Positions 8,653 through 60,115 of a stretch of DNA of 64,000 nucleotides are shown here, one piece after another. The notes beneath the pieces were generated by a model that ran no database searches, was not told the DNA's origin, and saw nothing but the letters and a program-made list of their open reading frames with translations. Source of the stretch: Squalus acanthias (taxonomy: Eukaryota); contig CM059453.1 of the NCBI GenBank assembly GCA_030390025.1, positions 6,634,001 through 6,698,000 on the forward strand, written 5' to 3'. The position numbers and the translations under genes are program-made. Every line of letters starts with the position of its first letter. The first letter of the stretch is position 1.

Positions 8653-8695
8653 ATGAGGAGTTGCGTGCTGCTGCCTCTCATAATGTTGACAGAAG
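8653..8695 (+). CDS. A1 signal-peptide exon ([14 protein letters not shown])
   Basis: gccATG start, hydrophobic core, phase-1 donor G|gtaca. Confidence 0.8.
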
Positions 8696-11600
8696 GTACA
8701 TTTCTGATGTTTTTTTTACAATTTCTGCAAGGGATTTATATCTTGTGGGAAAGGAGCAGCAAAATAACGAATATGAATGACTTTTTTGTTATTGATTTCA
8801 GAACTTGTGAAATAGGAATTTCATGATTGTTTAACGCGTGCATTGTTGTTGTATTATAGCGTATACAGCCTATTCAAATAATATTTAAATACAGGAATTT
8901 CAAAATAATTTTTATTGTAAAGCACATTTAATAAAATTGACTTCATATTGTTTGATTGATTCAAATGAGCTTCAATAGATGTTTAATATTTATTTTAATC
9001 AATATTTTAACATATATTTAATGAGAATTTTTATTGGGCGTTCGCTTACTTGTTAGTGGAAATGTATTCGTTTTTTAGATGAGTATTAATTTTTTATATT
9101 GCCGGTTCATAAATCTCCCATCAAATAGCTATTCCTATGGCCAATTCCATAGGTGTTGTGATTGGAAATGATTCAGTATTTTTTCTTGATTTTCAAGAGA
9201 CCTTCACTGATATTTGAATTGCTATTGTGATGGGCGACTATTTGTCAATTAACAAATACTTTAATGGATGACAAAGATGCTGAAATGCATTTTGAGTGAC
9301 TAATGAAAGGGTGTCTAAATTATTTTTCTCAGTTGTTTTTAGTGCTGAATTCTCTGTGATGATACCAAAAGCTGTGTCGGCGGTGGCCGGTTCATGTGCA
9401 GAAATCCGCTGTAGGTTTGGTTATCCAGACTATCGGAGAATCGGTGATGTGACGTGGTTAAAGAGGGAACATGCTCCTGGTAACCAAGGTTACTCCATTA
9501 TCTATGATTCTAAAGATCCATACAGGCTGCATTATAACTATCGTGGAGGAGCTGAGTTCAAGTGTAACATTGAAAAGAAACAATGTTCCCTCCTGCTAAA
9601 GGATATCAGGAAGAGTGATGAGGGTACATACGAACTCAGCATCGCGAACGCTTCGGCCTGGTCTATTAATGGACGTCGCAGTCAGCGTCCTCACGTATTT
9701 CTTTCTGTTTTAGGTGAGTATTCCATTTGATCCTTTTTTTGTACATTTTCACTCCAGTGCTTCAGTATGAATCAACCTATGTGCAAAGTGGCCATATATT
9801 ATAATATTCCTTACCGATCTCAAAGGGTAGTTGAAACAAAGGTTGCAAGGATACTGATAAGGGTCGAAGATGTCTGATATCCTAAACACAGAAGTATACA
9901 GACATTACAACAGTAAAACAGGCCATTCGGCCCAGCCAGTTTGTGTTGCTGTTGGACCTTCTCATGAGCAACACTCCGAATCGCATTTGCCTGCTCAGTT
10001 CACATATCCCTTTATTGCAATTCTTTTCCAACACGTGTCGAACCAATTAAGAAATATCCACATGAGGCTAGATTCGTACTTGTTGACTGAACCTAAAACT
10101 GACGTTGTAGGTCGTACTTACAATACATAATCCAGCAGCTCATTATTTCCAATGAAATGAAAGGTAATGAAACTAGGCCGGTAATCTGGAATGAGAGTTT
10201 TGACCAGGGCGGCCATTTCAAATTCTACTTCAATCTGCTTCTGTCTCCTCTGTCCTGTTGCTTAATAAGTTTAAGCACTTCTGTCAAATCATCCCAAAGT
10301 CTTTTTTATCCTTATTAGATCTGCCCCAATTATTAAATACTTGCTTGGTATTTATACATCCTCATACCAGCCAGAAACTACGCGAAGCCGCCCTAAATCC
10401 TTCCTCTAGTCTGGAGCCCAATAACCGCATTAACACTCCAACTGTGAACTGACTGCTGCTCTCGCTAAAATCTCCACTGATCTCGAATTTATATTATTGA
10501 TCTCTTGCCATTAAACCCAGAGCTCTAGAAACATCTTCATACACTTTCCCACTGGAAGTGCCACTTTTACTCTCTCATGAACCTGACCCCAAAATCCTCC
10601 GCTCTTCCACATCTCCCAGCTTTCTACCGTTCAAATTAGCATCTCCCAACTCATATATTCTGACCTTTAATTATATCTGCATCTTCTGTCCCCATTCTAC
10701 TATATCTCCTGTATCCGTTTGTAACTCGCTATAGTTCTCTATTTATCAACTGGGAGTTGTACTTGCAAGTTTGGCATGGGTGTCAAACTGCAGATATTGG
10801 ATTCGCCTCTAATTGTACACCACGCCCAATTTTCATTTTGATAGAATCCAATTAATTCCTGACGGGAAATTTTGACATCATTCTCTTGCGCGTCTCTCCA
10901 AATTATTGATGCACACAGTGAGTAGAAGAAATCCCACAGGACAACCCTGTGGGACACCGTACTGGATCCAGCTGTTCTGAGCAACTGCGCTTAACAGCGA
11001 CTCACTACATCGTCCCTTCTGAACAGTTTGTATTGTAATTTCTCCCTAATCCTTAAATACAAACCTCTTAATATCTTCTCCAATAATCTCCTGTGTTTAC
11101 CGTCTGCCATCGCTGCTTGATCACATTTCAAATTACTTCTTGGTGAAGCGTCTTTTGACGCCGCGAGTACTTAAAAGGCGTTGAATTAATTCAGTCTTTG
11201 TTCGTGCCTTTCCCTATCCAGCGCTCATTTACCCCGCTTTTAATTAGATCTTAATTAAAAATTAGATATTTCAGTTACGTGAAAAACTGTTCAAGTTATC
11301 ATTTATTTTTTCATTCAAATTCCACGGCTATAAATATTATTTCTGCTGAAGCCTTCTTCAAATTTACACGCGAGGAACCTGGGCTGGTTCTCCAACCCAA
11401 GGTGGTGTTACCCGTCGTTTGTCTGGTCTTTCTATGTCTTGAGCATTGTCGTTCTATATTGACGTTTCTTGACAGCAGAATCGAGATCTCTCTGGGTCTG
11501 CATTAATCACCATCACATAGGCAATTGCTGGTGCAGAACGAGGTGTACGAAAGGATGAAATATTCGTGACATTTTGAGGAGATAACGTTAATTCAAAGTC

Positions 11601-14600
11601 CAGCGTGCAAAATTTGTTCACTGGACAATATCCATAATACAAATAATTTGGAGATAATAAGACTCATGGTTATATTAAGTGTGGCCATATGTTAACCTAT
11701 GAGGCATAAAACTGCTTTACAACTGCGAAGAGTAATTCAGAATGGTGAACACACTTGCAAGACGTAGCAGAGAGAAATGAACAAAATCTGATTTTCTTGT
11801 TATTTCTATCTCAGATGTAGTTGTAAGCTATCAATCGCCCGTTTTAACATTGAAATGTACCTAACAAGCTGTTTTTCTCCCGTTTTTATAGAAAAGCCAG
11901 AGATTGCAGGTTATGGGGAATTGATCGCTGGACAAAAAGCACGATTGAAATGTTCCGTCACCCACAACTGCCCGGATGGCAAACTGAAACTGAAGTGGAT
12001 TAATTACGATGTGTCCCTTCCTCCCCCAATGGATACTCAAGATGGAGCAGAAATTAGCAATGAAAGTTCAGGTTCTCGGACAGTTTCATCCGTGATCACC
12101 TTTACACCATCATCTGCTCATGACGGGAAAATTCTGGGATGCACAATTCTAATTGATGGTATCCTAACTCCTTCGGCACAAAATCTTACCTTGGAGATTA
12201 AAGGTAAGTGTCCGATCTAAAGTAAACAGATTTATCCTGTAGGACAACGGGCTCCAAATTTTACAATTTTCCAACAAGTAATTTATTTGGGGTGAGAACT
12301 GCATCAAAGAATGCATCATGAAAAGCTTAGCCTCTGTACCAGGAGAGCTCACTTCAATAATCAAAAGTTCGGAATGCCTCTCATCTAATGCTCATCAGTC
12401 AGATTACATTAGAAACATTCATATCCATGAATCAATGATTTTGCCTACAACAGATTTTTTAATGTGATTGTTAATCTTTATTCTAAGAACTTCCAGTCAG
12501 GTTCTGAGTTTAGTCAGTCATAAATGGAAGCCATGATGCGGAGATGCCGTTGTTGGACTGGGGTGGACAAAAATGAGAGGTCGCACAAAACCAGGTTATA
12601 GTCCAACAGTTTTATTTAAAATTACGAGCTCGTAATTTTAAATAAAACTTTTGGACTATAACCTGGTGTTGTGCGACCTCTCATAAATGGAAGGAACAAA
12701 GGCCATGCCAAGTTAGGATCTGAAACGATGATACCCGATCTCAGCTCTGGGTGGGCTTAATAAGAACTTAAGAATTCGGAACAGGAGTAGGCCATACGTT
12801 CCTTCGAGCCTGTTCCGCCACTCCGGCAATCATGGCTAATCATCAATCTGAACTCCAATTTCTCGCCCGATCCCCATACCCAATATAATGAATAAAGTAG
12901 GGGCTCAATTATGCTTATTCGACAATCACATTTTGCATCAACGGCTGTTTCAGATGGACTGGAATTCCCAACGTTCTACTGCACTATAGTAGCTGTGGAA
13001 GGAAGTTCATTATTATTATACTGCACGGCCTGTGGGAAACCCCTGGTCAGTTCAAGATGTGTGAAAAATGGTGAAGAGATCAGCAGGTCTTCCACTGGTG
13101 AACTAAAGCAGATATTCCACAGCATCCGTTCTGAGGACGACGGTGAATATTGGTGCATAGCGGAAAATGCCGTGGGCACCACAAACCGTTCCACACAAAT
13201 GTCTGTACAATTTAATTATGTATTAATTTATCAATTAGATAGCAGCCTTTCAGTTCACGAACTCTGGATTAAATACCAATTTTCTCTTGCCTGCTTGCTG
13301 GAAGGCGCCCATGTGCACGAGTTAGGAATAGTTTCACCCCTTCCAGCGGAAATAGCGGGAAACTACCTCGATGGCAACAAAAATGGAAACTAACCCGGCA
13401 TCTCGCTCAGTATGACAGGAGTGGAATATGGCACAATGTCTCATAAATGCAGCAGGTCTTACATTTATGAGGTTGCGACACAAGCACATTTACTGGGACC
13501 TTTCCTCTACAACTAATTGTTCATAAATTATATTCGTCGTCCTAAATAAGCAACTTTCCAATCCTTAGAACTGACTTGCAGGAATTTGATGAGCACAAAT
13601 TCTCTCCAAAAAAAGTGTGATAAAATGTTGTTAAGCCATCTCCTGTTACTTGTATTAATGTTGATTGAATAGTGTAATATTCTCGCGAATTGGTTCTTTG
13701 AAATGTCTCCTTGAGAGCCGGACGTTCATTGAAGAATCACATCAGTCCACCACACATGAAGATGTTTAAAACAGGACACAAAGTGAAGACATTGAAATAA
13801 ATTGACCTTTTAAAACAGTGACGTTTGAGACACCTTTTTGGGTATACTATGCAGAATCAAATCTCTGAGCTAGCTCCGTCTGAGGGACCCTCACAACATC
13901 TGTCAGGAGATGTATTGATGGACTGAACACACATTTATTTAATGTTGATTTGTTCCTAACGAGCTCACCTGTTATAAGTGGAAATATAATAAAACATGAA
14001 CTGGTGCAACATAGGCTGCTTCATCTTAAAATATAACAACCAGAACTATTATTGTTATTTCAACTCATTACTTAATTTTATTTCGACACTACGGCAGTTT
14101 ACATGATCATTTACTGTTGAAGTTTCCATTTTTTGTAGATAAACCCACAATTTTAGCAGGCCCGACATGCACCAGCTCTGAGAATTGGACGAATTGTAGC
14201 TGCCGGATCAGAGCCAATCCCCCGGGAAACATCACGTGGGGCCTCAATGGGAGAATCCTCACTGGGGACAGGTCAGATGTGGAAATCATCTCCTGGGCGG
14301 TGAATAGTCGACTCATGGAGAGCTCCCTGAGACTGACTCACCCAACCGGAAACGGAAACCTGATCTCATATGTTGCAACAAACAAGCACGGTGATTCTGT
14401 CAGTAAATACCATCTCCACTCTAAGGGTACGTGTTTACTCTATCTGTAATGTAAAACTATAAGGGAGTTGGTCCACCACTGGTCAGTCACTAATTGAACG
14501 GTGTTAGTGTCAGCACATACCAGCTCCATTCAGCAGGTCCATACTGGATCTCTCTCGAATTAGTATTAGGACCGCTTTCCATCAGTGGTCAATCTCCGAC

Positions 14601-17600
14601 TGAAATGTGCGGTCGGCATTATCCATTTTAACTTTCATTCTTCTGCTACTTGTTCGGTTTATATTTTCAAGATAAGTTGAAATCATCTGAGCAGCTGAAT
14701 TAGCCAGTAATCTTGGAAAACAAATTCTTCTGATTTAAGATAAACCCTTTAGAAATTCCTAAATTATCTCAATACATGATAGCAAACTGCAATCTACACT
14801 TTTGTAGCTATATGCTCATTTCTATCTTATTCAGACTAATTTGGGGATGTAGAACCGATATTCAATAACCGAAGCGAAATTAAATTATCGCTATAGATTA
14901 TGAATCTTACCGCTGTAACTTGTGAACTTGGCGGGCCTGTATTCCGATCAGATTAAACCAACGCTTTTTCCTTGGGTGGGTTGTGGAGTGAACTTAATTT
15001 GTCAATTGAGATTTTTACATCAGTGAATCTTAATTTATTGATTCCAATTTACGCCAGGCCGCAACACAGGGATAAAAGGCTTTTACGCAAGGATCATCAG
15101 GTTTTGACAAGTGGAGTACATAATTTACAATTAGCTTTGTGATCCAATCATGAAGGAAACTTGCTTCATCACACTCATAAATGTGCTTCCAAGATTGTTG
15201 TTTAATCCCAAATTCCTAATACAGAGCAATGTTATCCGACATTTTAGGAATATACTCCAGGACAATCCTCCTCATAATAGGAGGAGGAGCCATTGGGCTT
15301 GTTATTCTAATTGCAATCGTGATCACGCTGAAGATAAAAAGGTAGGTGTGATTATTAATTATGTAGAATTAAGTTTCAACGCAAACCTGCATCAGAACGT
15401 TCATGTATCAAAATCTCCTTTAAATTAAACTCCCGTGAGAAAAGTGTGCATCAGCCGAAACTGGTCGGAAGGTCAATCATCCCTGACCATTCGCTCGCAT
15501 CTCCAAGCATCAAATACAGATTAATATTAGTGGCTGCTTGAATCAGGCTGTCTGTACATTCTTCCTGTTCCATTATAGGGGTCTGTTTCCTTCTGTTTAA
15601 AGTGGAAATTTTTGGACTTCTGATCGCTGGCGCTCTTTGTGCCAGGGAGTGTTTACAATTCCCGTGCAATCTGGATAAAGTTTTCAGCAGGCTCAAAGAA
15701 TGGGCAAACAATCCTTTCAGTTTTTTTCTGCTGCTGGTTTTATGGGGCATCCTCACACGAGCTTCCTTGTCATGACTGACTCTCAGCAAAACAATACACC
15801 AGATTGACAATTAAGCTCTATCAATCAAGCTAGTACAGCAAACAGTAAAGCAAAAAGCAAACAGTAAAATTAACGTGACACAGACGTTTACAGTCGTTGT
15901 TAAGGTTGCTTCGCTCAAGGAGTAGAAAATTAAATTTCAAAATTGGTGTGACTGAAGTGCTAAAGTATGATACAAGCAGTTATTCATGTTGCGCTTGTTA
16001 TCTTATTCTTCCCAGTGATTTAAGCTATTTCGTCTGACTAGCTTTCTTTCAAAGCTCTGGACAGACTCGCTGCTTTATATAGACAGGCTGATAATTACAT
16101 TCAGAATTGTGACCGGCTCCAACTGAATTCAAATAACACCCAATTAGGTTTACAATCGGCTGCCAATCAAATTTATCCTTCAACCAATCGGACAGGAGGT
16201 GTACAATTGAAATCTATGACGCCGCCCCTCAACAGACAATGTTTCGACAACAACCGCAACAGCATGAGCCAGAACACTCTTTTAGATTTTAATCCTTCCT
16301 GTACCATGATATATTTAAAGAAGGCAATTCCATGCTTAATAATATCAACTACTCAATGATCGCAAAAAGATTGATGAGGAATATTGATGTATTCCTAATT
16401 TCTAACTTCAATGTGTTGAAGTGGTCTACCTAATAATAGAAAGGACTGCGTTGACACATTGAACCACTTGCATCTGCTATTTTCCCAGGTTGAAATCATT
16501 AATAAACCTCCCACTGACCGTTATTTATCACACTCAACTTTCAGCTAGCGCAATCAGCACAGTATCATTAACACCAATCGTAGATACATTGAAATGCACC
16601 CCTTTTGAAATGTTGGCCTGTGGAAATTGAAATGAATTGGGTTGCGGATCTGGTCTGTGCTTTTTGGGAGAAGTAAATGACACAAGGTGCCAAATAAAAG
16701 GTTATTACATAAGATTAGGGCTCATGCTGTTGGGGGTTATATAGTTGCATGGATAGAGGATTGGTTAACAGACAGAAAACAGTGTCGGTATAAACGGATC
16801 TTTTTCAGGTTTGCAGGCTGCAACATGTAGGTTGCCGCAATGATCAGTGTTGGGGCCCCAGCTATTTAAAATCTATATTAATGATCTAGATGAAGAGACC
16901 GAGTGTAATGTATCCAATTTTTTTGCTGATACACAACTCGTGGGACAGTAAGGTGTGAGGAGACAACAAAGCGTCTGCTGAGGGATATAGATAGACTAAG
17001 TGAGTGGGCAGTAAGGTGGCAGATGGAGAATAATGTAAGGAAATGTGAGGTCATTCACTTTGGTAGGAAGAATAGCAAAACAGAATATTTTTTAAATGGT
17101 GAGAAACTTTCAAATGTTGGTGTTCAGGGAGATTTGCGTGTCCTCGTGCAAGAAACACAGAAAGCTAGCATGCAGGTACAGCAAGCAATAAGGAAGGCAA
17201 ATGGCGTGTTGGCCTTTATTGTTAGGGGGTTGGAGTCTAAGAGTAAGGAGGTTTTGCTACAATTGTACAGGGCCTTGGTGGGACCACACCTAGAGTACTG
17301 TGCACAGTTTTGGTCTCCTTATCTATGGAAGGATATATTTGCCTTGGAGGCGTGCAACGAAGGTTCACCAGATTGATTCCTGGGATGAGAGGGTTGTCTT
17401 ACGATGACAGATTGTGAAGAATGGGCCTATATTATCTGGAGTTTAGAAGAATGAGAGATGATCTCTTTGAAGCAGACAAGATTCTGTAGAGGATTGACAG
17501 GGTAGATGCTGTCAGGCTGTATCTCCTGGCTGGAGTCTCTAGAAATAGGGGGCATAGTCTCAGGATAAGTGGTAGGCCATTTAAGACGGAGATGAGGAGT

Positions 17601-43620: not shown

Positions 43621-43707
43621 CTGATCTGTTTGGCCGAAACTAACGGTTCAATCAATTTTATCTGTGTCTGTTACAGCAACATTTGTATTTACGACAGGAA
43701 CCTTTAT

Positions 43708-48600: not shown

Positions 48601-51600
48601 TAACGTTGATTCGAAGTCCAGCGTGCAAAATTTGTTCACTGGACAATATCCATGATACAAATAATTTGGATATATAACGACTAATAGTTATTTAAGTGGG
48701 GCCATTTGTTACCTGATGAGGCATAAAACTGCATTACAACTGCGAGGAGTAATTCAGAATGGTGACACAGTTGCAACACGTGGCAGAGAAAAATGAGCAA
48801 AATGTGATTTTCTTGTTATTTCTTTCTCAGATTTAGTTGTAAGCCCATTTTAAAATTGAAATGTACCTAACAAGCTGGTTTTCTCCCGTTTTTATAGAAA
48901 AGCCAGAGATTTCAGGTGATGGGGAATTGATCGCTGGACAAACTGCACGATTGAACTGTTCCATCACGCACAACTGCCCGGAAGGCAACCTGAAACTGAA
49001 GTGGATTAATTACAATGTGTTCCCTTCTCCCCCAATGGATACTCAAGTTGGAGCAGAAATTAGAAATGAAAGTTCAGGTTCTCGGACAGTTTCATCCGTG
49101 ATCACCTTAAAACCATCATCTGCTCATGAAGGAAAAATTATGGGATGCACAATTCTAATTGATGATATCCCAACTCCTTCTGTACAAAATATTACCTTGG
49201 AGATGAAAGGTAAGTATCCGGTGTAAAGTAAACAGACTTATCCTGTCGGACAACGGGCTCCAAATCTGCAATTTTAGCACAAGTAATTTATTAGGGGTTA
49301 GAACTGCATCAGAGGATGAATCATGAAAAGCTCAGCCTCTGTACCAGTAGAGCTTACCTCGATAACCAAACGTTCGGAATGGCTCTCATCTAATTCTCAT
49401 CATTCAGATTACATTAGAATCATTCATATCCATGAATCAATTATGGTGCCTACAACAGATTTTTTAATGTGATTGTTAATAATTATTCTATGAACTTCCA
49501 GTCATGTTCTGAGTTTAGTCAGTCATAAATGGAAGCAACAAAGGCCATGCCGAGTTAAGATCTAAAGCTATGACACCAGATCTCAGCTCTGGTTGAGCTT
49601 AATAAGAACTTAAGAATTAGGAACAGGAGTAGGCCATACGGCCCTTCGAGCCTGCTCCGCCACTCCGGCAATCATGGCTGATAATCGAAGTTAACTCCAA
49701 TTTCCCGCCTGATCCACATACCCATTATAATGAATTAATTAGGAGCTCAATTATGCTTATTCGACCGTCACGTTTTGCATTAACGTCTGATTCAGAGGGA
49801 CTGGACATCAGAACCGTCAACTGCTCTATAGTTGCTGTGGAAGGAAGTTCATTCTTATTTTCCTGCACGGCCTGTGGGAAACCCCTGGTCAGTTGAAAAT
49901 GTGTGAAAAATGGGGTAGAGATCAGCAGGTCTTCCACTGGTGAACTAAAGCAGATATTGCGCAACATTCGTTCAGAGGACGGCGGTGAATATTGGCGCCT
50001 AGCTGAAAATGCCCTGGGCACCACAAAACGTTCCACATAAATTTCTGTACAATGTAGGTATGTATTAATTTATCAATTAGACAGTAGCCTTTCATGTCAC
50101 GAACTATGGATTAAATTCCAATTCTCTCTTGCCTGCTTGCTAGAAGGCTCCCATGTGTATGAGTTTGGGACAGTTTCACCCCTTCCCGCGGAAATAGCGG
50201 CAAACTACCTCGACGGCTTCAATAATGGAAACTAACCTGGCATCTCGCTCAGTATGACAGGAGTGGAATATCGCACAATGCCTCATAAATGCAGCAGGTC
50301 TTACATTTATGAGGTTGCGACACAAGCACATTTACTGGGATATTTAATCGACAACTAATTGTTCATAAATTATACTCATCATCTGAAATAAACAATCCTT
50401 AGAGCCGGCTTGCAGCAATTTGATGAGTACCAATTATTTCCAAAAAAAGTGAGATAAAATGGTGTTCAGCCAACTCCTGTTACTTGTATTAACGTTGAGT
50501 TAATAGTGTAATATTCTCGCGTCTTGGTTCTTTGAAATGTCGCCTTGTGAGCCGGACGTTTATTGAAGAATCACGTCAGTCCACCATAAATGAAGATGTT
50601 TAAAACAGTACACAAAGTGAAGACATTGAAATAAATTGAACTTTTAAAACATTGACGGGTGAGACACCTTTGTGGGCTATTATACATGATCAAATCTCTG
50701 AGCTAGCTCCGTCTGAGGGTCCCTCACAACATCTGTCATGAGATGCATTGATGGACTGAACACTCATTGGATTTAATATGGAATTGTTCCTAACGAGCTC
50801 ACCTGTTATAAGTAAAAATATAATAAGCCATGAACTGGTGCAACATAGATTGCTTCATCTTAAAATATAACAACCAGAACTATTATTGTTATTTCAACTC
50901 ATTACTTCATTGTATTTTGACACTACAACTGTTTTCATGATCATTTCCTATTGAAGTTTCCATATTTTTTTTAGGTAAACCCACAATTTTAGCAGGCCCG
51001 ACATGCACCAACTCTGAGAATTGGACGGATTGTAGCTGCCGGATCAGAGCCAATCCCCCGGGAAACATTACGTGGGGCCTCAATGGGAGAATCCTCACTG
51101 GGGACAGGTCAGATGTGGAAATCATCTCCTGGGCGGTGAATAGTCACCGAATGGAGAGCTCCCTGAGACTGACTCACCCACCCAGAACCGGAAACCTGAT
51201 CTCATGTGTTGTTGCAAACGAGCACGGTGAATCTGTCAGTATATATGATCTCCACTCTAAGGGTACGTTTTTAATCTATCTGTAATGTAAAACTATAAGG
51301 GAGTTGGTACATCACTGGTCAGTCACTAACTGAACGGTGTTAGTGTCAGCAAATACCAGCTCCAGTCAGCAGGTCCATACGGAATCTAACTCGAATTAGT
51401 GTTAGGACCTATTTTCAATCAACAACTGAAAGGTGCGGTCGGCATTATCCATTTAAACTTTCAGTCTTCTGAAACTGGCTCGGTTTATATTTTTAGATAT
51501 GATGAAATTATCTGAACACCAGAAGTAGCCAGTGATCTTGGAAAACAAATTCTTCTGAATTAAGATAAACACTTTTGAAAATCCAAATTACTCTTAATAC

Positions 51601-54600
51601 ATGATAGCAAACTGCAATCTGCCCTAATTGTATGTACATGATCATTTCTATCTTGTTCAGACTCATTTAAGTATGTAAAGCCGATATTTAATAACCCATG
51701 TGAAACTGAATTATCTCTATAGATTATAAATCTTACCGCTGTAACTGGTGACCTTAGCGTTCCGGTATTATGATTGGTTTATGCCCCCTGTTTTTCCGAG
51801 GGTGGGTTGTCGCGCTAACTTCATTTTTCAAATATGATTTTCCCACCAGCGAATCTTAAATTATTTATTTCAAATTTACGCCAGGCCGCAACACAGGAAT
51901 AAAATGCTTTTACGCAAGGCTGAGACAAGCACGATTTACCTTTTGTAAATCCATGTTGACTTTGTCCGATCCTGTCACTGTTTTTCAAATGCTCAGCTAT
52001 TACATCCTTTATAATGGACTCTAGCATTTCCCCCACTACCGATGTCAGGCTTTCCGGTCTGTAATTCCCGCTTTATCTCTACCACCCTTTTTGAATAGTG
52101 GGGTAACATTAGCTACCCACCAATTCATGGGTACAGTTTCAGATTCCATCGAATGTTGGAAGATGACCAGCAATGCATCTATTATTTCTAGGGCCACTTC
52201 CTTAAGTACGCTAGGATGTAGATTATCAGGCCCTGGGGATTTATCGGCCTTCAATCCCGTCAATTTCGCTCACACCATTTCCCTGCAAATACTGCTTAAT
52301 TTCAGTTCCTCCCTTTCATCGAACCCTATGTTCTCTAACATCTCTGGGAGGTTATTTGTGTCCTCCTTTGTGAAGACAGAACCAAAATCTGCATTTACTT
52401 GGTCTTCCATTACTTTGTTCCCCATTATAACTTCCCCTGCTTCTGACTGCAAGGGACCTGCACTTGATTTCACTTAACTTTTTCTTTTCTCATATCTATA
52501 AAAGCTGGTACAGTCAGTTTTTATGTTCCCAGCAAGCTTACGTTCATATTCTATTTTCCCCTTCTTAATAAATCCCTTTGTCCTCTTTTGTTAAATCCTA
52601 AACTGCTCCCAATCCTCAAGATTACCGCTTTTTCCGGCCAATGTGTATGCCCTCTCCTTGAATCTTACGCTATCCCTAATTTCCCTTTGTTAGACACAGT
52701 TGAGTCTATATTTTTGTTGTATTCGTATGCCACACTGGGATGAACAAATTCTGTAGTTCATCCATGTAGTCTTTGAATGTTTGCCATTGCCTATCCACCA
52801 TCAACCCCTTGAGTGACATTCCCCAATCAATCCTACCAATTCGCGCCTCATACCATCGTAGTTTCCTTTATTTCAATTCAGGTCCCTTGTCTCTGATTCA
52901 ACTACTTCACTCTCCATCCTAATGAAGAATTATATCATATTATGATCACTCTGACCCAAGGGGCCTCGTGCAACAAGATGGCTAATTAATCCTTTCTCGT
53001 TACATAATACCCAGTCTAAGATGGCCTGATCTCTGGTTGGTTCCTCGACATATTGTTCCAGAAAACCATCCCATAAACATTCTAGGAATTCCTCCTCCAC
53101 AGTATTTTTACTAATTTGGTTAGCCCAATCTATATGCAAATTAAAGTCACCCATGATGACTGCTGTGCCCTTACTGCATGCCTCTCTAATTTCACTTTTA
53201 ATGCCGTCCCCGACCTCCGTATTACTATTTGGAGGTCTATATACCACTCCCACTGACGTTTTCTGCCCCTTGTTATTTCTTAGTTCTACCCATACAGATT
53301 CCGCATCATCAGAACTAATATCCTTCCTTTCAATGGTGTTAATCCCCTCTTTAACCAGCAATGCTACCCCAACTCCCTTTCTTTTTTGCCTATCTTTCTT
53401 AAATAACGAATAACCCTGGATTTTGAGTTCCCAGCCTTGTCCACCCTGGAGCCATGTTTCTGTAATCCCAATCAAATCATATTCATTTACCTCTATTGGC
53501 GCAGCTAATTCGACCACCTTGTTCCGAATGCTCCTTGCATTAAGACACAAAGTCTTCAGACTTGTTTTTTTTTAACGCTCTCAGACCTATATGAATTATT
53601 ATTTACTGTGACCATGTTTGATTTAAACCGTTGAGTTCTTTGCCTTCTACTTTAGTTATTCTCCTTCCTGTCTTTTGCTTTTATCCTTGTTTCCCATCAC
53701 TCTGTCTCCCTGCTCTGGTTTCCAACCCGCTGCCACCTTAGTTTAAACCCTCCCCAACAGCACTAGCAAACACTCCCCCGAGGACATCGGTCCCGGCCCT
53801 GCCCAGGTGCAAACCGTCCCGTTTGTACTGGTCCCACCTCCCCCATACCCGTTTCCAATGTCCAAGGAATTTGAATCCCTCCCCCTTGCACCATTCCTCC
53901 AGCTATGTATTCATTTGAAACATCCTCCTATTACTACTCTGACTAGCACGTGGCACTGGTAGCAATCCTAAGATTACTACCTTTGAGGTCCTATTTTTAA
54001 ATTACGTCCTATCTCCCTCTATTCTGCTTTTAGGTCCTTATCCCGTTTTTTACCTATATCGTTGAAGCCTAAGTGCACCACAACAACTGGCTGGTCGCCC
54101 TCCCCCTCCAAAATGTTCCGTAGCCGCTCCGAGACGTCCTTGAACCTTGCACCAGGGAGGCAACACACCATCCTGGAGTCTCGTTTGCGGCCGCAGAAAC
54201 GCCTATCTATTCCCCTTACAATTGAATCGCCTATCACTATAGCTCTTCCACACTTTTTCCTCCCAGCCTGTGCAGCAGAGCCACCTATGGTGCGAGGAAG
54301 TTGGCTGCTGCCGCCTACCCCTGCTAAGTCATCCCCCCCCAACAGCATCCAAAGTGGTATATCTGTTTGAGAGGGGGAAGGCCACAGGGGAACCCTGCAC
54401 TACTTGCCTGCAGCTCTTATTCTCGCTGGTGGTCACCCTTTCACTTCCTGCCTGTACACTCTTTACTTGCGGTGTGACCAACTCCCTAAACGTGTTATCC
54501 ACGATGTTCTCAGCATCGCGAATGCTCCAATATGCATCCATCTGCAGCTCCAGCGCCGCAATGTGGTCCGTCAGTAGCTGCAGCTGGATACATTTCCCAC

Positions 54601-57600
54601 ACACATGGTCGTCAGGGATACAGGAAGCGTCGCTGATTTCCCACATATAGCAGGAGGAGCATATCACGGGGCAGAGCTCTCCTGCCATGATTTACCCTTT
54701 AATTAATTAATTACAATTAAACTGATTGAATGCCACCAATTTCAATTCAATTAAATGATATACTTAAGAGCCTTTGCTTAACAGCCGTCCCCGCTACACC
54801 ACAGAGACTCTAGAAACTATAAACCACAGAATTTAAGTATGGAAAAAAGGAGAAAGAGAGAAATACTCACCAACCAATCACTTACCTGCTTTCTGCTGAT
54901 GTCACTCTTCGATTACTTTTTACTTCTTTACACTCACCGGTCCGTTGCAGCTCACCTTTGAAATCTCCCGAGGTTTGGCGCTCTCCAGCCGCTCTCGTTC
55001 ACCTTTGAAATCTCCCGAGGTTTGGCGCTCTCCAGCCGCTCTCGCTCACCTTTGAAATCTCCCGAGGTTTGGCGCTCTCCAGCCGCTCTCGCTCACCTTT
55101 GAAATCTCCCGAGGTTTGGCGCTCTCCAGCCGCTCTCGCTCACCTTTGAAATCTCCCGAGGTTTGGCGCTCTCCAGCCGCTCTCGCTCACCTTTGAAATC
55201 TCCCGAGGTTTGGCGCTCTCCAGCCGCTATCCGCTTTAATTAATTGAACTTAAATTAAATCAAATCAATCCCACCAATTATACTATAATTAAATGATATA
55301 GGGCCCTTGTTTACCAACTTTCCCCGCTACACCACAGAGACCCTAGAAACTTTAAATCACAAAATTTAAGTTTGGAAAAAAGAGTTAAAGAGAAATACTC
55401 ACCAACTTCTGTGTTTCTAAGCGGAGTGCCTCACTTTCCATTAGCTTTCTGATCCAAACATAAAGGAAACTTGATACCTCACACACAAAAATTTGCTTCG
55501 AAGATTGTTGTTTAAATCCAATTCCTTAAGGTACAGCAATGTTTCTTTCCAATTTTTTAGGAATATTCTCCAGGACAATTGTTCTCATCATAAGAGGAGG
55601 AGCCACTGGGATTTTTTTTCTAATTGCAGTCGTGCTCCTGCTGAAGATACAAAGGTATGAGTGATTCCTAATTACATAGAATGAAGTTTTAAAGGGGATC
55701 CTGCATCAGAAATTTCGTGTATAAAAAGGTCGTTGAAATTAATCTCCCGTGAGTAGAGTGAGCAAATGCCTGAATCGAAGCTGAAAGGAGGTGGGTCAAT
55801 CGTCCCCTGACCAGTCGCTCGCATCTCCCAGCATCAGCTATGGAGTAATATTAGTGTCTGATTCAATGGGGCTATCTCTGCATTCTTCTTGTTATATTAT
55901 TGCGGTTTGTTTCCTTATAGATAACTGACATTTTTGGACTTCTGATCGCTGTCGCGCTATGCGCCAGGGATTGTTTTCGCCTACCGTGTAATCTAGATAA
56001 AATTCGCAGTATGCTCAAAGAATGGACAGAGAAACCCTTCCAGTTAGTTTCTGCTGCTGGTTTTACGGGGCACCCTCACTCAAGCCTCCTTGCCATGTCA
56101 GGCTCCCAGCACAACACTAAACCAGGTTGATATTAAGTTCTAACAATCAAGCAAGTCCAGCAAACAGTAAAACAACAAACAAATAGTCAAATTAACGTGA
56201 CACATATGTTTACAGTAGTGGTTAAGTTTGTTTGGATCCAGGAGTAGAATATTATATTTCAAAATTGGGTGTGACTGATGTGCTAAAGTATGATATAAGG
56301 GATTATTTATGTTGGGCTTGTTATCTTATTCTTACCAGTGACTTAATATATTTGGCATGACTAGCTCTCACTGAAAGATCTCGACAGAATCCCCGCTTAT
56401 AATGGATATGCTGATAATTAGCTTCAAGGAGGTGAACGGCTCCAAGTGAATTCCAATTATATCTATTCGGATTATAATGTGCTGCAAACCAAAATTACTC
56501 TTCAACAAATCACAAACGATGTTTACAATTGAAATCAGTGACGGGCTCCTCAGGTAGGGGCCCTCCATAACAGATAATGATTCGGCAACAAAAATAACAA
56601 GATGAGTTCGAATACTCTTGTGAGTTTTGCTGGATTATAACCCTTCCTGTACCATGCTAAGTAATATATAAATGCTTCTTTCAGTGATACTGAGGAAGGA
56701 TCTCAAAGTGGTTATTGAGGAATATCGATTTATTCCCCATTTCACACTCAAATTTTGATATATATTAATAACTTGGACATGGGGGTACAGGGCACAATTT
56801 CGAAATTTGCAGATGACAGCGAACATGGAAGTGTAGTGAACAGTGAGGAAGATAGTAATAGAGTTCAAAGGGACAGAGACAGGCTTGTGGAATGGGTGGA
56901 CACATGGCAGATGAAAGTCAACACAGAAAACTGTGAGGTGTTAGATTTGGGTAGGGAGAATGAGAAGAGACAAGACATGCGAAATGGTACAATTTTAAAG
57001 GGGGTGCAGTAACAGAGAGACGTGGTGCTGCTTGTGCACGACACTTTGTAATTGGCAGGACAGGTTAATAAAGCATCAATAAAGATTATGGAAGCCTGGA
57101 CTTTATAAATAGTTGCACAGAGTACAAAAGCCAGAAAGTTGTGCTCACCCGATAGAAAACATTGGTTCGGCCCCAGCTGGAGTATTCTGTCCAATTCTGA
57201 GTACCACACTATCGGAAGGAGGTGAAGGCTTTGGAGAGGGTGCAGAAGAGATTTACTAGAATGGTTCCAGGGATGAGGGATTACAGTTATGTGGATAGGC
57301 TGGAGAAGCAGGGCCTGTTCTCCTTAGAGCAGCGAAATAAATAGGAGATTTGATAGACCTGTTCAAAATCATGGAAGGTTTAGATAAAGTAAATAACGAT
57401 AAATTGATTACAATGCCTGAAATTTCGTTAACCAGAGACAGAGGTTTAAGGCGATTGGCGAATGAACCAGAGGCGACATGAGGACAAAATTAATTTAAGC
57501 AAAAAGTGGTTAGCATTTGAAATGCACTGACCGAAAGGGTTATAGATCTAGTAATCATAGATTGTAATGTGTTTGCACGTTGAAACTCTTCCATCTGCTA

Positions 57601-60115
57601 CTTAATAAGTTGTTAAAATACTGAATGATCCTCCTATGTCCTATCAGCACAATCAGCTTTCACCATGAGCAAGCAACTCCGCGCCATTAACCAGCTTCAT
57701 TGATAAAGTCAACAGTTCCCTTTTGAAATGTAGGCAGATTGATAATTGAAAAGAATTGCAGAGCGGACGTGGTCTGTGCTAATCAGAAAACGTAAAAGAT
57801 ATAGGTCTCTCCTGACCTACGAACGTCCTTCACAGTATACATTAAGTAAACATACCAGTTATCTATGAAATGTGCGTTATTGTTATTTGTTATTATTTAG
57901 GAAGAAGAGCAGTGAGACTGCATGCGTGCCGAAAACGACTAGTGGTGCGATGGTGTACACTGGGGTTCTAAACGGCGAGGTAAGTGAAGCCAAGCTGGAG
58001 TGACAATTGTAGGATGTTTGGTGTGTTTTCAACCAGCGAGTGACCCAGAACAGGCAAAGCCCAATAGATAAATGGGACTTTCAGAAATTTGGTCCCTAGT
58101 GTTTTAAGGGGGTAATAGCCACTAAGAGTGAAGTATATCGACGGACTCTATAGATAGTTTTTTTTATTCGTTCTAGGGATGTGGGCGTGGCTGGCAAAGC
58201 CAGCATGTATTGCCTATCCCTAATTGCCCTTGAACATGTGGTGGTGAGCCGCCTTCTTGAACCGCTGCAGTCCGCGTTCTGAAGCTGCTCCCATAGTGCT
58301 GTTAGGGAGGGAGCTCCAGTATTTTGACCTAGCGACAATAAGGAATGGCGATATATTTCCAAGTCAGGATGGTGTGTGACTTGGAGGGGAACTTGGAGGT
58401 AATGGTGTTCCCAAGCACCTGCTGGCCTTGTCCTTCTAGCTGGTAGAGGTTGCGGGTTTGGGAGTTGCTGCCGAAGAAGCCTTGGTGAGTTGCTGCAGTG
58501 CATTTTGTAGATGGCACACACTGCAGCCACGGTGCGCCGGTGGTGGAGGGAATGAATGTTAAATGTGGTGGATGGGGTGCCACTCAAGCGGGCTGCTTTG
58601 TCCTGGATGGTGTCGATTTTGTACAGTGTTGGGGCTGCACTACCTGTAGATAGCGCCTTCGTAAGTGGAATTAGGGTGTATTTCCCACGTTGCTATTTCT
58701 ATTCAAAACAAACTCTTTCAAAAATAATGCGTTCCCCAACTTACCTTACCCAATTCCCGTTACCATTAGGTCACATGAGGTTAAATATTCAACGCAGTCA
58801 CAGAAGCTGTCAGATGTATCAGAGGGATCCATATTACTCAGGATTATGTTCAATTTCCGAACTGCACCTCACTGTCGATGTGGCCCAATTGTCCATCACC
58901 TTTAAGGCGGAAGGATTTGGGTTTAAGCTTCACTCCGGCATTTGAACGGTCAGTGCAACACTGAGGGAGAGCTGCATTGCCAGTGGTACGTCTTTTGAGA
59001 CTTTAAAACGCGCTCCCGTTTGCTTCTTCCTGTGGAGGGAAGCGAAATCACGTTCTTATTGTGGAATCGGAAGAATGTTCTCCCCGTACCCTTGCAAGCA
59101 TTTCTCCCAATAAACACAATCTAAAAAAGATTAATTCGCCATTTGTCTAATTTACTGGTTGCTGCATGTTGCTCCAACAGTGATTATACTTTAAAAGTGA
59201 TCCATTGACTAGCAACGCTTTGCTATTATTAAACATGGAATCACACAGCACAGAAGAGGCCATTCAGGCCACCGTGTCAGTGTTGGATCATGGAAAGATC
59301 TAACCAAGTCTTCATGTGAGCCCTGCTCTTTCCCCATCGCCCCTGAAAATGTTCCCCTTTTCAAGTATGTATCCAAGTCACCTTTGAAAGTTACAATTCA
59401 GTCTGCCTCTACCATTCTTGCAGGCAATACATTCCAGATCATACGAACTCGCAGCGTGAAAAAAGTCTCCCTCTCGTTATTTTGCCAATCAGCTTAAAAT
59501 TGAGTCCTCTGGTAACCGACACTCCTGCCAGCGGAAACAGTTTCTCCGATTTACTCCATCAAAAACATTAATAACTTTGAAATCCTCTTTTAAATCTCCC
59601 CAAACCTTTTCTGTTCTAAGAACATCAATCGCCGCTTCTCCAGTCTCTCCGCATAATTGAAGACCCGTAACCCTGGCAGGATTCTAGTAAATCTCCTCTG
59701 CAAATTCTGTATGTCTTGACATCTTTCCTAATGCGTGTACTTGACACAATGCTCCAGCTGAGATCAAACCAGTGATTTTTACAGGTTTAGCGTAACTGCC
59801 TTGATTTTGTACTCGATGAATTTATTATAAATCTATGAGTCCCGAATGCATTTAAACAGCCTCAGCAACTTCCTCTGATATAAATTTGGAAGATATTTAT
59901 TTCTAGCATCAAGACCTCACAACGCATATCTCATGAATGAGCGCCATTAGAAAAGTTACCAGAGATTATATAGTTAGCTGTGCTCTGGTGCAGACAGCGC
60001 ACTCCCATCGTGTTCAACTTTAAATCTGCAATAGCTCCATATCTAACACGAATTTCTTCCATTACAGAGGGACGATTACGTGAGCCCCGCAATCGATGCA
60101 ACCAGCTCAGAATGA
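45656..60115 (+). CDS. Siglec-like receptor A2, candidate activating paralog (or pseudogene). Exons 45656-45698, 46337-46717, 48898-49209, [49796-50053 with stops], 50975-51262, 55561-55654, 57901-57979, 60068-60115; 414 aa if the bracketed exon is skipped
   Basis: All unbracketed exons are open with AG/GT sites and compatible phases. TM carries Arg (AGA 55593-55595). Last exon is frameshifted to RDDYVSPAIDATSSE*. Confidence 0.7.
46337..46717 (+). CDS. A2 V-set Ig exon
   Basis: 381 nt, open, within ORF 46315..46878. Confidence 0.9.
48898..49209 (+). CDS. A2 C2-set Ig exon (domain 2)
   Basis: 312 nt, open; CSITHNCP. Confidence 0.9.
49796..50053 (+). pseudogene. A2 third Ig exon, disabled
   Basis: TGA at 49894-49896, TAA at 50038-50040, F-strand Cys to Arg (EYWRLA); AG and GT retained. 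Confidence 0.88.
50975..51262 (+). CDS. A2 membrane-proximal Ig exon
   Basis: 288 nt, open, all Cys retained (GPTC..CSC...ISCV). Confidence 0.88.
51922..55405 (-). mobile_element. CR1 LINE 5' half: 5'UTR, ORF1 (Zn finger, coiled coil, SGNH esterase), ORF2 APE endonuclease; 3'-truncated at KGKSCL
   Basis: ORFs 54329..54688 (CSSC..CGKC), 54019..54348 (IGDSIVR..HLGFND), 52930..53550 (CLNARS, ITETWL, YRPP, GDFN, SDHN). Confidence 0.93.
54952..55228. repeat. 47-bp tandem repeat, ~6 copies, in the CR1 5' region
   Basis: tcacctttgaaatctcccgaggtttggcgctctccagccgctctcgc starting at 54952, 54999, 55046, 55093, 55140 and 55187. Confidence 0.95.
55561..55654 (+). CDS. A2 transmembrane exon with intramembrane Arg (GIFSRTIVLIIRGGATGIFFLIAVVLLLKIQR)
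   Basis: 94-nt phase 1-2 exon; GGA in A1 (15280-15282) is AGA here. Confidence 0.88.
56700..57550 (+). mobile_element. Degenerate CR1 RT fragment, unit 2 only
   Basis: IYINNLD..ISKFADD..LVEWVDTWQM. Confidence 0.85.
57901..57979 (+). CDS. A2 cytoplasmic exon 1 (RKKSSETACVPKTTSGAMVYTGVLNGE)
   Basis: tttag|G AAG AAG...GAG|gtaagt; homologous to 17961-18048 and 9 nt shorter. Confidence 0.82.
58160..58640 (-). mobile_element. LINE 3' end (CR1/L2-like RT C-terminus and tail)
   Basis: NIHSLHHRRTVAAVCAIYKMHC; tail shared with the SINE at 32205-32690. Confidence 0.75.
60068..60115 (+). CDS. A2 terminal exon, frameshift-truncated; ancestral ILYVTV and CEYAPI motifs lie out of frame downstream
   Basis: 13 nt between GAT and CAATCG versus 30 nt in A1; TGA at 60113-60115. 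Confidence 0.82.
   Translation, partial: RDDYVSPAIDATSSE

What the first reader, a model, noticed from the sequence alone, without database searches (positions are those of the whole stretch)
8653..60115. Candidate paired inhibitory/activating Siglec-like receptors (A1/A2) generated by tandem duplication in a probable shark
Seen: A1 and A2 share closely similar V-C2-C2 ectodomains. A1 has an uncharged TM and three tyrosine motifs (VIYSTV, IAYATV, SEYAAI). A2 shows three concordant changes: TM Gly to Arg (LIIRGGATG), first ITIM degraded to MVYTGV, and a 17-nt deletion that ends the protein before the two distal motifs. Known: mammalian pairs such as Siglec-5/14, Siglec-11/16, LILRB/LILRA and PIR-B/A use this design, with a basic TM residue recruiting DAP12 or FcR-gamma. 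Inference: an independent inhibitory-to-activating conversion in this lineage. Caveat: A2 is only intact if exon 49796-50053 is skipped, so it could be a decaying pseudogene.
Basis: partly seen in the sequence, partly recalled or inferred. Interest (0 to 1): 0.9.

Follow-up and report, generated by a model that had tools for sequence, protein, structure and literature searches.

The report
Shark Siglec-like inhibitory/Arg-bearing receptor pair
Two neighbouring shark immune-receptor genes have similar outer parts, but one keeps its inhibitory tail while the other has gained a membrane arginine and lost that tail, so it is either a young activating partner or a gene that has just begun to decay.

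Summary
A1 is an intact V-C2-C2 Siglec-like gene with three tyrosine motifs. A2 has a GGA>AGA (Gly>Arg) change in the membrane exon, MVYTGV as its first motif, and a net 17-nt loss that stops translation before the distal motifs.

Only a 14.7-kb 5' block was copied recently (10.6% non-coding mismatch). The membrane and tail exons are 21-29% diverged, so A2 is a chimera.

The assembly gap lies between genes, and its flanks are colinear with the sequence downstream of A2.

The stop-containing exon is dead in both copies: A1 has lost its donor (GT>TT). Skipping it is therefore the shared state.

The four 5' coding exons have 0 indels where 5.9 are expected (P=0.003). The neighbouring B pseudogenes do carry frameshifts.

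Against an activating role:
- the Arg replaces a Gly kept in 11 of 11 shark homologues;
- basic residues two positions upstream co-occur with ITIM tails;
- the old ITIM frame is still open;
- no A2-specific RNA was seen.

A cleaner activating/inhibitory pair is annotated in Mustelus asterias. First readers flagged similar pairs at 8 or more other places in this genome (unchecked).

Verdict: partly supported.

The parts
8653..8695 (+). A1 exon 1 (ATG, signal peptide [14 protein letters not shown], phase-1 donor)
   Evidence: The peptide resembles the N-termini of P0013 and P0002.
9333..9713 (+). A1 V-set exon (Siglec-type; Ser at the place of the sialic-acid Arg)
11892..12203 (+). A1 first C2 exon
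   Evidence: (Siglec-8 domain 2, MAG).
12954..13213 (+). A1 relic I-set exon ('exon X'). The frame is open, the ancestral donor GT is now TT, and the core Trp is now Cys.
   Evidence: Mismatch to the A2 copy is 31 of 260.
14139..14426 (+). A1 second C2 exon
   Evidence: 74% to P0006.
15248..15341 (+). A1 membrane exon, uncharged core ([10 protein letters not shown]...)
17961..18048 (+). A1 cytoplasmic exon with VIYSTV
22425..22586 (+). A1 last exon with IAYATV and SEYAAI, then the stop
45656..45698 (+). A2 exon 1
46337..46717 (+). A2 V-set exon
48898..49209 (+). A2 first C2 exon
49796..50053 (+). A2 relic I-set exon. Splice sites are intact, there are two in-frame stops (TGA, TAA), and the second Cys is now Arg.
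   Evidence: No RNA contig lies on it in run X3.
50975..51262 (+). A2 second C2 exon
51923..55419 (-). CR1/L2-like LINE fragment (ORF1, endonuclease, start of RT), cut at its own 3' side. It sits exactly where A1/A2 identity falls from 87.5% to 76.5%.
55561..55654 (+). A2 membrane exon. The Arg codon AGA is at 55593-55595.
57901..57979 (+). A2 cytoplasmic exon with MVYTGV. It is 9 nt shorter than in A1 and still in frame.
   Evidence: No tblastn hit at E below 1e-3.
60068..60115 (+). A2 last exon as read after the net 17-nt loss, ending in TGA
60084..60221 (+). Former reading frame of the A2 last exon. It is still open and holds ILYVTV (60120-60137) and CEYAPI (60189-60206).
   Evidence: (60% to P0156, E 1.6e-11).
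377..15092 (.). Young copied block, unit 1: the 5' halves of head-to-head genes B1 and A1
36256..51919 (.). Young copied block, unit 2: the 5' halves of B2 and A2
26419..27099 (.). Assembly gap between genes, with colinear flanks

Best explanation
A1 and A2 are neighbouring members of a large shark family of Siglec-type Ig receptors whose V domain lacks the sialic-acid arginine.

A1 is an ordinary inhibitory member: signal, V, C2, C2, an uncharged membrane helix, and a tail with two ITIMs and one ITIM/ITSM-like motif.

A2 is a chimera. Its 5' half (promoter side, signal, V and both C2 exons) was overwritten fairly recently by a 14.7-kb copy shared with A1. Its membrane and tail exons come from an older paralogue that carried an inhibitory tail for most of its history.

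In that older 3' half, two late changes removed inhibition and added a charge. A net 17-nt loss puts the two distal motifs out of frame, and Gly>Arg lies about seven residues into the membrane helix. The first motif is also degenerate.

I commit to A2 being a still-used, non-inhibitory derivative. With exon X skipped, as it must be in A1, it yields a V-C2-C2 receptor. Its membrane Arg could dock onto an Asp-bearing ITAM adaptor and so oppose A1.

Shown: the gene structures, the chimeric history, and the constraint on the ectodomain exons. Inferred: exon skipping in A2, surface expression, adaptor coupling and activation.
For: Gene models: all splice borders are AG/GT and the frames are open. 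Each A1 junction has the same neighbours as in shark gene models P0002, P0156, P0013 and P0158.

Constraint on the ectodomain exons: in 6281 aligned columns, non-coding DNA has 530 mismatches in 4997 nt and 29 gap events. The four 5' coding exons (1024 nt) have 72 mismatches and 0 gap events against 5.9 expected, P=0.003. Exon versus intron mismatch gives Fisher P=0.0004.

Internal control: the V exons of B1 and B2 lie inside the same copied block and show three 1-nt gaps and broken frames.

Exon X: it is neutral-like (31 of 260, P=0.47 against introns) and disabled differently in each copy. Skipping is therefore the shared state. P0002, P0156 and P0158 show that V-C2-C2 is a natural layout.

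Lesions are confined to the signalling end. The former tail frame is still 60% identical to Pristiophorus P0156, and NEETCEYAPIK is identical. The tail was therefore selected until recently.

Mechanism is plausible. In passages of PMC1440944, a polyleucine helix with one well-placed basic residue was enough for assembly in three of four receptors tested, and FcR-gamma partners carry Arg in the N-terminal part of the helix.

Sharks have the design. Mustelus P0087 has a membrane Arg, a 12-residue tail and no ITIM. Its numbered neighbour P0004, with an ITIM tail, shares 286 of 371 identical residues up to the membrane.

RNA: in 1 of 4 runs (X3), six short contigs lie only on the V, C2 and C2 exons. 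None lies on exon X or on introns apart from repeats.
Against: - No read or contig shows A2's membrane exon, its tail or any junction. One search listed no joints.
- The X3 contigs mix A2-type and A1-type letters, so they may come from an allele, a paralogue or another species. Runs X1, X2 and X4 show only repeats, plus traces in one intron for X4.
- Exon X of A2 keeps a usable acceptor and donor. If it is included, translation stops early.
- The Arg replaces a Gly present in 11 of 11 homologous shark sequences, which fall into six 90% clusters. It is unique and could be a fresh damaging change.
- P0002 (Arg) and P0157 (Lys) have a basic residue two places upstream together with ITIM tails. 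A basic residue near this border is therefore no proof of activation.
- A2 does not use the dedicated Arg-bearing membrane exon seen in Mustelus and Cetorhinus, and the window holds none.
- dN/dS between A1 and A2 is 1.4, not different from 1 (P=0.30).
- The ectodomains differ at 54 of 324 residues, far from the near-identity of classical pairs.
- In passages of PMC4016189 (2014), no FcR-gamma homologue was found in sharks. I did not test for adaptors here.
Confidence: 0.45

Rival explanations
1. A2 is a gene that has just died. The frameshift in the last exon and the Gly>Arg in the membrane helix are its first disabling hits. Exon X, with intact splice sites and two stops, adds a premature stop to its transcripts.
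For: - The Arg sits at a Gly kept in 11 of 11 homologues.
- The former ITIM frame is still open and conserved, as expected soon after a frameshift.
- The cytoplasmic exon with MVYTGV no longer matches homologues at E below 1e-3.
- Both neighbouring B genes are pseudogenes: V-exon frameshifts and two stops in the B2 tail exon.
- No A2-specific RNA was found.
- dN/dS is about 1.4 and not significant.
Against: - There are zero indels in 1024 nt of 5' coding exons against 5.9 expected. The B V exons in the same block have three.
- All 12 splice borders of A2 are intact, including 5 in the old 3' part where neutral mismatch is 21-24%.
- The damage is confined to the signalling end.
Confidence: 0.37
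2. A2 is still inhibitory, or dual. An alternative acceptor (AG at 60109-60110, exon starting at 60111, phase 0) would read NEEILYVTV...CEYAPIK in frame. The Arg then merely sits at the helix border, as in ITIM-bearing relatives.
For: - The former frame is open for 45 codons with both motifs.
- P0002 and P0157 combine a basic residue near this border with ITIM tails.
- First readers noted other Arg-plus-ITIM receptors in this genome (unchecked).
Against: - The alternative acceptor has no pyrimidine tract ahead of it (sequence).
- The canonical acceptor, shared with A1, is strong.
- The hydrophobic run before the Arg (TIVLII) places it inside the helix, not at its edge.
Confidence: 0.1
3. A2 mainly makes a truncated soluble V-C2 product, or a transcript destroyed by surveillance, because exon X is spliced in.
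For: The exon X acceptor and its phase-1 donor (exon end 50053, followed by GTAGGT) are intact in A2.
Against: - The C2-2 exon downstream shows no indel and 20 of 288 mismatches, below the intron rate.
- No X3 contig lies on exon X, while the flanking exons are covered.
Confidence: 0.08

Closest known systems
Human Siglec-5 / Siglec-14 and Siglec-11 / Siglec-16 paired receptors. Search listing and abstracts of PMC4042635 and PMC5701461 were seen; details are recalled.
   Same: Neighbouring Siglec-type genes. The 5' part encoding the outer domains is kept or made similar by a copying event. The 3' part is divergent. One partner has ITIMs; the other has a basic membrane residue and a short tail.
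   Different: - Here the outer parts are only 83% identical in protein, not near-identical.
- The copied tract is one 14.7-kb block ending at a truncated LINE, not a short conversion tract.
- The V domain lacks the sialic-acid Arg.
- Adaptor coupling is untested.
- The Arg is a unique single-base change in an inhibitory-type membrane exon.
Activating KIR and Ly49 formed again and again from inhibitory homologues. Title and abstract start of PMC2213150 were seen; the rest is recalled.
   Same: The route is the same: an inhibitory gene gains a charged membrane residue and loses its ITIM tail by truncation. Such forms are young and short-lived.
   Different: A different Ig family and lineage. No population or functional data exist here.
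Mustelus asterias XP_078093181.1 (P0087) and XP_078093182.1 (P0004). Cetorhinus maximus XP_078392811.1 (P0050) has the same membrane type.
   Same: The same shark Siglec-like family. One gene has a membrane Arg and a short motif-less tail; the other has ITIMs. The outer parts are closely alike.
   Different: - Those use a separate membrane-exon type (FPIRV..., tail ...MNSH) shared by two species, so it is older and conserved. A2 has a one-off Arg in the ITIM-type exon.
Siglecs without the essential arginine (for example human Siglec-XII, named in the abstract of PMC8615218 seen as non-sialic-acid-binding)
   Same: Siglec-type V domain with the key Arg replaced.
   Different: Here the loss is family-wide in this window, according to first-reader note s1-888103. 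I checked A1 and A2 only.
Skate MDIR families of activating/inhibitory receptors (passages of PMC3031540)
   Same: They show that activating/inhibitory Ig-receptor multigene families already exist in cartilaginous fish.
   Different: CD300/TREM-like V domains, not Siglec-type.

Membership tests
Siglec (I-type lectin) family | N-terminal V-set domain most similar to Siglec V domains | tested here: met
   PDB phmmer: sialoadhesin 2.7e-12 (A1) and 3.4e-14 (A2), followed by MAG and Siglec-7, -5, -8, -10. JAML, nectin-4 and others also appear in the list. Pfam: V-set plus Ig_CD22, at or above cut-off for both.
Siglec (I-type lectin) family | Siglec cysteine pattern: two Cys in the first strand region, one Cys in the strand before the F strand, and no Cys after the F-strand Tyr | tested here: met
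   Alignment to sialoadhesin puts query C..C and the later C on its three Cys. Both lack a Cys after GTY. Which strands these are is recalled, not tested.
Siglec (I-type lectin) family | Essential arginine on the F strand that binds the sialic-acid carboxylate | tested here: not met
   A2 GTYELSFE aligns without gaps to sialoadhesin GTYNFRFE, so Ser stands at the Arg. A1 reads GTYELSIA. That this Arg is the essential one is recalled.
Siglec (I-type lectin) family | Binding of sialylated glycans | not testable with these tools
   Needs glycan arrays with recombinant ectodomains.
Siglec (I-type lectin) family | C2-set domains after the V domain, the first with the extra Cys pair | tested here: met
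   The first C2 exon matches Siglec-8 domain 2 (2.8e-4) and MAG (5.8e-4), with lkCsvthnC aligned to LTCSVPWAC. Pfam scores are below cut-off. Homologues match strongly.
CD33-related-type inhibitory Siglec | Membrane-proximal ITIM plus a distal ITIM-like motif in the tail | tested here: met
   This holds for A1 only: VIYSTV, IAYATV and SEYAAI are in frame. In A2 none is canonical and in frame. The consensus is recalled. Orthology to mammalian CD33-related genes was not tested.
Paired activating receptor (adaptor-coupled) | Outer domains closely similar to a neighbouring inhibitory receptor | tested here: met
   270 of 324 residues are identical, and 912 of 981 nt in the three Ig exons.
Paired activating receptor (adaptor-coupled) | Lys or Arg inside the membrane helix | tested here: met
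   Arg at 55593-55595, seventh residue after the Ser-Arg border. The best 19-residue hydropathy window still scores 2.39 and includes it.
Paired activating receptor (adaptor-coupled) | Short tail without ITIM | tested here: inconclusive
   True on the canonical splice model. The junctions were not seen in RNA, and the former ITIM frame is open.
Paired activating receptor (adaptor-coupled) | Transcribed as an intact mRNA | tested here: inconclusive
   no joints. Exon-only contigs appear in 1 of 4 runs and are not clearly from A2.
Paired activating receptor (adaptor-coupled) | The basic residue is conserved in relatives of the same type | tested here: not met
   Gly in 11 of 11 homologous sequences. 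None of them is an orthologue, and the window's species is absent from the protein collections.
Paired activating receptor (adaptor-coupled) | Association with DAP12, FcR-gamma or a like adaptor through a membrane Asp | not testable with these tools
   A 2014 survey found no FcR-gamma in sharks (PMC4016189 passages).

The most novel reading that the evidence does not exclude
A2 is an activating receptor caught at birth. An inhibitory shark Siglec-like gene had its ligand-binding half overwritten by its neighbour's. It was then switched by one Gly>Arg base change and one 17-nt loss. This would be an independent, very early-branching re-invention of the Siglec-5/14 design, made by the route known for KIR. 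It sits in a family that has given up the sialic-acid arginine and so probably reads another ligand.
Probability: 0.25. Interest if true: 0.75.

Novelty: new member of a known kind. Interest (0 to 1): 0.5.

Why it matters
Paired inhibitory/activating receptors are a hallmark of fast host-pathogen arms races in mammals. For Siglecs they are described, as far as my searches reach, only in mammals. Searches found no paper on shark Siglec pairs.

A shark locus with the same layout would show that this design, and the way it is made, recurs across the jawed vertebrates. The layout is a similar outer half, a divergent signalling half, a membrane Arg and a lost ITIM tail. It is made by a copy of the 5' half, a point change and a frameshift.

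Two points give concrete things to test. The family lacks the sialic-acid arginine. A cleaner pair sits in the public Mustelus annotation. The open questions are what these receptors bind and which adaptor, if any, sharks use.

If A2 is instead a fresh pseudogene, the locus is an ordinary snapshot of birth and death in an immune multigene family.

Tried and rejected
Simple recent tandem duplication of the whole gene: rejected. Identity is 87.5-89% only up to 15092/51919, and 68-77% over the membrane, tail and downstream DNA.

The 88% match 20858-22264 to 51923-53327 first looked like a moved intron piece or a sign of two alternative membrane/tail cassettes. It is two copies of one minus-strand CR1/L2-like LINE, carrying endonuclease and RT frames.

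A dedicated Arg-type membrane exon hidden in an intron, as in Mustelus and Cetorhinus: none found in six frames.

A third gene between the units: no Ig exon lies in 23000-36100. The stray SEYAAI at 31218 lies beside a 24-nt tandem array and has no other homology.

dN/dS as a test of function: no power. It is 1.4 over the ectodomain (P=0.30), with counts of 12 to 3 in the membrane exon and 16 to 5 in the former tail frame.

Dating the frameshift from stops in the former frame: by my estimate about 0.3-0.7 stops are expected, so there is no power.

RNA: the run search gave 5 runs with shares of 0.05-0.06. Laying 4 of the 5 on 46000-51999 gave no joints.

Protein search with P0002 gave 6 proteins at E of 1e-20 or below among 5122 candidates, none from the window's species. 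I ran no further search on P0156.

Literature: searches returned nothing useful. The 2025 review PMC13358205 has no passage on sharks or fish Siglecs.

Supplements were not opened. Supplementary file 9 of the whale-shark paper (PMC8455134) may list Siglec families, and I did not see it.

Structure prediction and fold search were not run, because the sequence matches were clear enough.

The spliced proteins were never joined. Each exon was searched or compared on its own, and only exon lengths were added up.


Full report
**What is in the window**

The window has one N run, 26419-27099.

A self-comparison shows a tandem repeat with a period of about 36 kb:
- 377-8669, 7773-12531 and 12681-15092 match 36256-44479, 44778-49536 and 49523-51919 at 89.1, 88.8 and 87.5%.
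- The rest matches far less well: 15109-16311 to 55419-56659 at 76.5%; 17893-18156 to 57833-58087 at 72%; 22264-22583 to 59907-60209 at 77%; 22605-22961 to 60778-61136 at 73%.

Each unit holds two head-to-head Ig-receptor genes. B lies on the minus strand and A on the plus strand.

**The gap**

The gap lies between the A1 stop (22586) and the 3' end of B2 (36175). No exon of A1 or A2 is near it.

Its two flanks match successive places downstream of A2 in the same order and strand: 25426-25766 to 62179-62495 and 27205-27452 to 62579-62869. The join across the gap is therefore consistent with the paralogous unit. Its length stays unknown. I did not try to fill it.

**The observation**

Pairwise alignment of each exon with its splice borders gives these models:
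- A1: 8653-8695, 9333-9713, 11892-12203, 14139-14426, 15248-15341, 17961-18048, 22425-22586.
- A2: 45656-45698, 46337-46717, 48898-49209, 50975-51262, 55561-55654, 57901-57979, 60068-60115.

All borders are AG/GT. The phases agree (1, 1, 1, 1, 2, 0). The lengths sum to multiples of three.

The membrane exon differs at 15 of 90 in-frame bases. One of these turns GGA into AGA.

The cytoplasmic exon of A2 is 9 nt shorter but still in frame, and reads MVYTGV where A1 reads VIYSTV.

The last exon of A2 is a net 17 nt shorter and stops after RDDYVSPAIDATSSE.

Every search and comparison was made exon by exon.

**What family**

Solved structures: the V exons match the sialoadhesin V-set domain best (E 2.7e-12 and 3.4e-14). 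MAG and Siglec-7, -5, -8, -10 and CD33 follow, together with other V-set proteins such as JAML and nectin-4.

Pfam gives V-set and Ig_CD22.

The three cysteines of the sialoadhesin V domain are matched, and neither protein has a Cys after the F-strand Tyr. At the sialoadhesin Arg in GTYNFRFE, A2 has Ser (GTYELSFE), and so does A1.

The first C2 exon matches Siglec-8 domain 2 and MAG.

A search of 1.84 billion representatives with the A1 V exon gave 249 proteins at E of 1e-3 or below. The full-length N-terminal matches are shark and ray gene models. They are named Siglec-8, -12, -13, -14, MAG-like or sialoadhesin-like, and come from Heterodontus, Heptranchias, Pristiophorus, Mustelus, Cetorhinus, Stegostoma, Chiloscyllium, Narcine and Hypanus.

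The best identity is 52-54%. A word-based search with P0002 found only 6 proteins at E of 1e-20 or below. The window's own species is therefore not in these collections.

**A1 is a typical inhibitory member**

Its exon peptides line up with those models junction by junction. Its three motifs correspond to conserved ones in P0156, P0013, P0157 and P0006.

**Exon X**

In A2 it has an acceptor and a phase-1 donor, but also two in-frame stops, and its second Cys is now Arg.

In A1 (12954-13213) the frame is open. However, the donor GT is now TT, no good phase-1 GT lies nearby, and the core Trp is now Cys.

Its A1/A2 mismatch is 31 of 260, the same as introns (P=0.47).

The exon is thus dead in both copies, by different lesions. 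V-C2-C2 is the layout of P0002, P0156 and P0158 as well. This lowers, but does not remove, the risk that A2 includes the exon.

**History**

The young block is 14.7 kb and holds the 5' halves of both B and A. It ends at 15092/51919, about 150 nt before the membrane exon of A1.

At that very point A2 carries 3.5 kb (51923-55419) of a minus-strand CR1/L2-like LINE. The fragment has ORF1, the endonuclease and the start of RT, but lacks the LINE's own 3' part. The end of the young block is therefore a non-homologous break, not a normal LINE insertion.

The 88% match between 20858-22264 and 51923-53327 is only two copies of this LINE family.

Beyond the break, non-coding mismatch is 208 of 966, 33 of 139, 33 of 161 and 108 of 372.

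A2 is therefore a chimera of a young 5' half and an old 3' half.

The former frame of the A2 last exon is still open from 60084 to 60221. It reads ILYVTV and CEYAPI, and is 60% identical to Pristiophorus P0156, with NEETCEYAPIK identical. That tail was kept by selection until late.

**Is A2 alive?**

For:
- From 8600 to 15092, non-coding DNA has 530 mismatches in 4997 nt and 29 gap events, 26 of them not multiples of three. The four coding exons (1024 nt) have 72 mismatches and no gap event, against 5.9 expected (P=0.003).
- Nonsynonymous and synonymous rates are both below the intron rate (P=0.005 and 0.006).
- The B V exons in the same block carry three 1-nt gaps and broken frames, and the B2 tail exon has two stops. 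Decay is therefore visible where it happens.

Against:
- dN/dS is 1.4 (58.5 nonsynonymous against 12.5 synonymous changes) and not different from 1.
- The 3' exons are too short for any such test.

**The arginine**

Of the 168 proteins held at that point, the 11 whose membrane region aligns with A2's membrane exon at a score of 45 or more all have Gly at the Arg position. These 11 fall into six 90% clusters. Ten of the 11 have ITIM tails; the eleventh is a short-tail isoform, P0154.

P0002 has Arg, and P0157 has Lys, two residues upstream, each together with ITIMs. A basic residue at this border is therefore not diagnostic.

On the other hand, the hydrophobic run TIVLII precedes the A2 Arg. 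The best 19-residue window still scores 2.39, against 3.01 in A1.

Passages of PMC1440944 state three things. FcR-gamma partners carry Arg in the N-terminal part of the helix. DAP12 partners of type I carry Lys near the centre. A polyleucine helix with one placed basic residue can be enough for assembly.

A 2014 survey reported no FcR-gamma homologue in sharks (PMC4016189 passages). I could not test adaptors here.

**A cleaner shark pair**

Mustelus asterias P0087 (XP_078093181.1) has a membrane Arg in a different helix type and a 12-residue tail with no ITIM. P0004 (XP_078093182.1) has ITIMs.

The two share 286 of 371 identical residues in one segment and 284 of 407 in another. They part at the membrane.

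Cetorhinus P0050 has the same helix type.

That the Mustelus genes are neighbours is inferred from accession order and one contig length.

The window holds no exon of that helix type.

**RNA**

The run search returned 5 runs, with shares of 0.05-0.06. I laid 4 of them on 46000-51999.

Their size and longest records look like transcriptomes, but the tool marks 'RNA' as a guess.

Runs X1, X2 and X4 cover only two high-copy repeat pieces, 49601-49662 and 51926-51998. X4 also has traces at 46800-47199.

X3, from another coded organism, has six short contigs on 46397-46467, 48895-48982 and 50976-51211. It has none on exon X and none on introns apart from the repeats. No joints were listed.

At A1/A2-differing places these contigs are mostly A2-like. 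One (50976-51140) is A1-like at 3 of 3 such places and has further differences.

This is weak support for transcripts of this gene type without exon X. It says nothing about A2's membrane exon or tail.

**Verdict**

I put 0.45 on A2 being a used, non-inhibitory and possibly adaptor-coupled derivative. Within that, about 0.25-0.3 is for true activation. I put 0.37 on a freshly dead gene, 0.10 on a still inhibitory or dual form, and 0.08 on a truncated product through exon X.

Literature searches found no paper on shark Siglec pairs. Activating/inhibitory Ig families in skates are known (PMC3031540 passages).

First readers of this scan noted similar candidate pairs at eight or more other places of this genome. 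None of those has been checked.

Noticed in passing
window 761-5443 (-) and 36175-41290 (-): Genes B1 and B2 are Siglec-like and lie head-to-head with A1 and A2. Both look like pseudogenes. Their V exons carry different 1-nt gaps that break the frame. The B2 tail exon (36175-36363) has two in-frame stops, one of them replacing the Tyr of the last motif.
   Followed up: partly
window 16715-17835 (+), 19594-22264 (-), 51821-54700 (-), 60208-60764, 63172-63918: Several copies of one CR1/L2-like LINE family. The copy in the A2 intron keeps an ORF1 with an esterase-like motif and a full endonuclease, but lacks its RT and 3' end. Another fragment sits right after the former stop of A2.
   Followed up: partly
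window 49601-49662 and 51926-51998: Two short repeat pieces are present at depths of thousands in the contigs of all four runs laid. They are probably parts of a highly expressed or very abundant SINE/LINE tail.
   Followed up: no
window 34850-35584: A 33-nt tandem array. The longest row has 16.4 copies at 92% match. It lies just outside the 5' end of the young copied block of unit 2.
   Followed up: no
window 31017-31235: A 24-nt tandem array (6.5 copies) is followed by a stray open frame ending in SEYAAI. No shark homologue matches it, so it is probably chance.
   Followed up: partly
proteins P0087 / P0004 (Mustelus asterias), P0050 / P0045 (Cetorhinus maximus): Public gene models with consecutive accession numbers form what looks like a true activating/inhibitory Siglec-like pair. 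The Arg-bearing membrane segment and the ...MNSH tail are shared by both species.
   Followed up: partly
proteins P0002 (Heterodontus) and P0157 (Heptranchias): Arg or Lys sits two residues before the GGG of the membrane helix, together with intact ITIM tails. This is a possible dual design, or merely a border residue.
   Followed up: no
window 57955-60085 (A2 tail): On the canonical splice model the short A2 tail has two tyrosines, YTGV and YVSP, seven residues apart. The spacing is ITAM-like but the +3 residues are not.
   Followed up: no
window 9333-9713 vs 46337-46717: Eight of the 18 residue differences between the two V domains cluster in two short stretches, positions 50-53 and 103-110 of the exon peptide. 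If the fold is Siglec-like, these may line the binding face. Their location in the fold was not checked.
   Followed up: no
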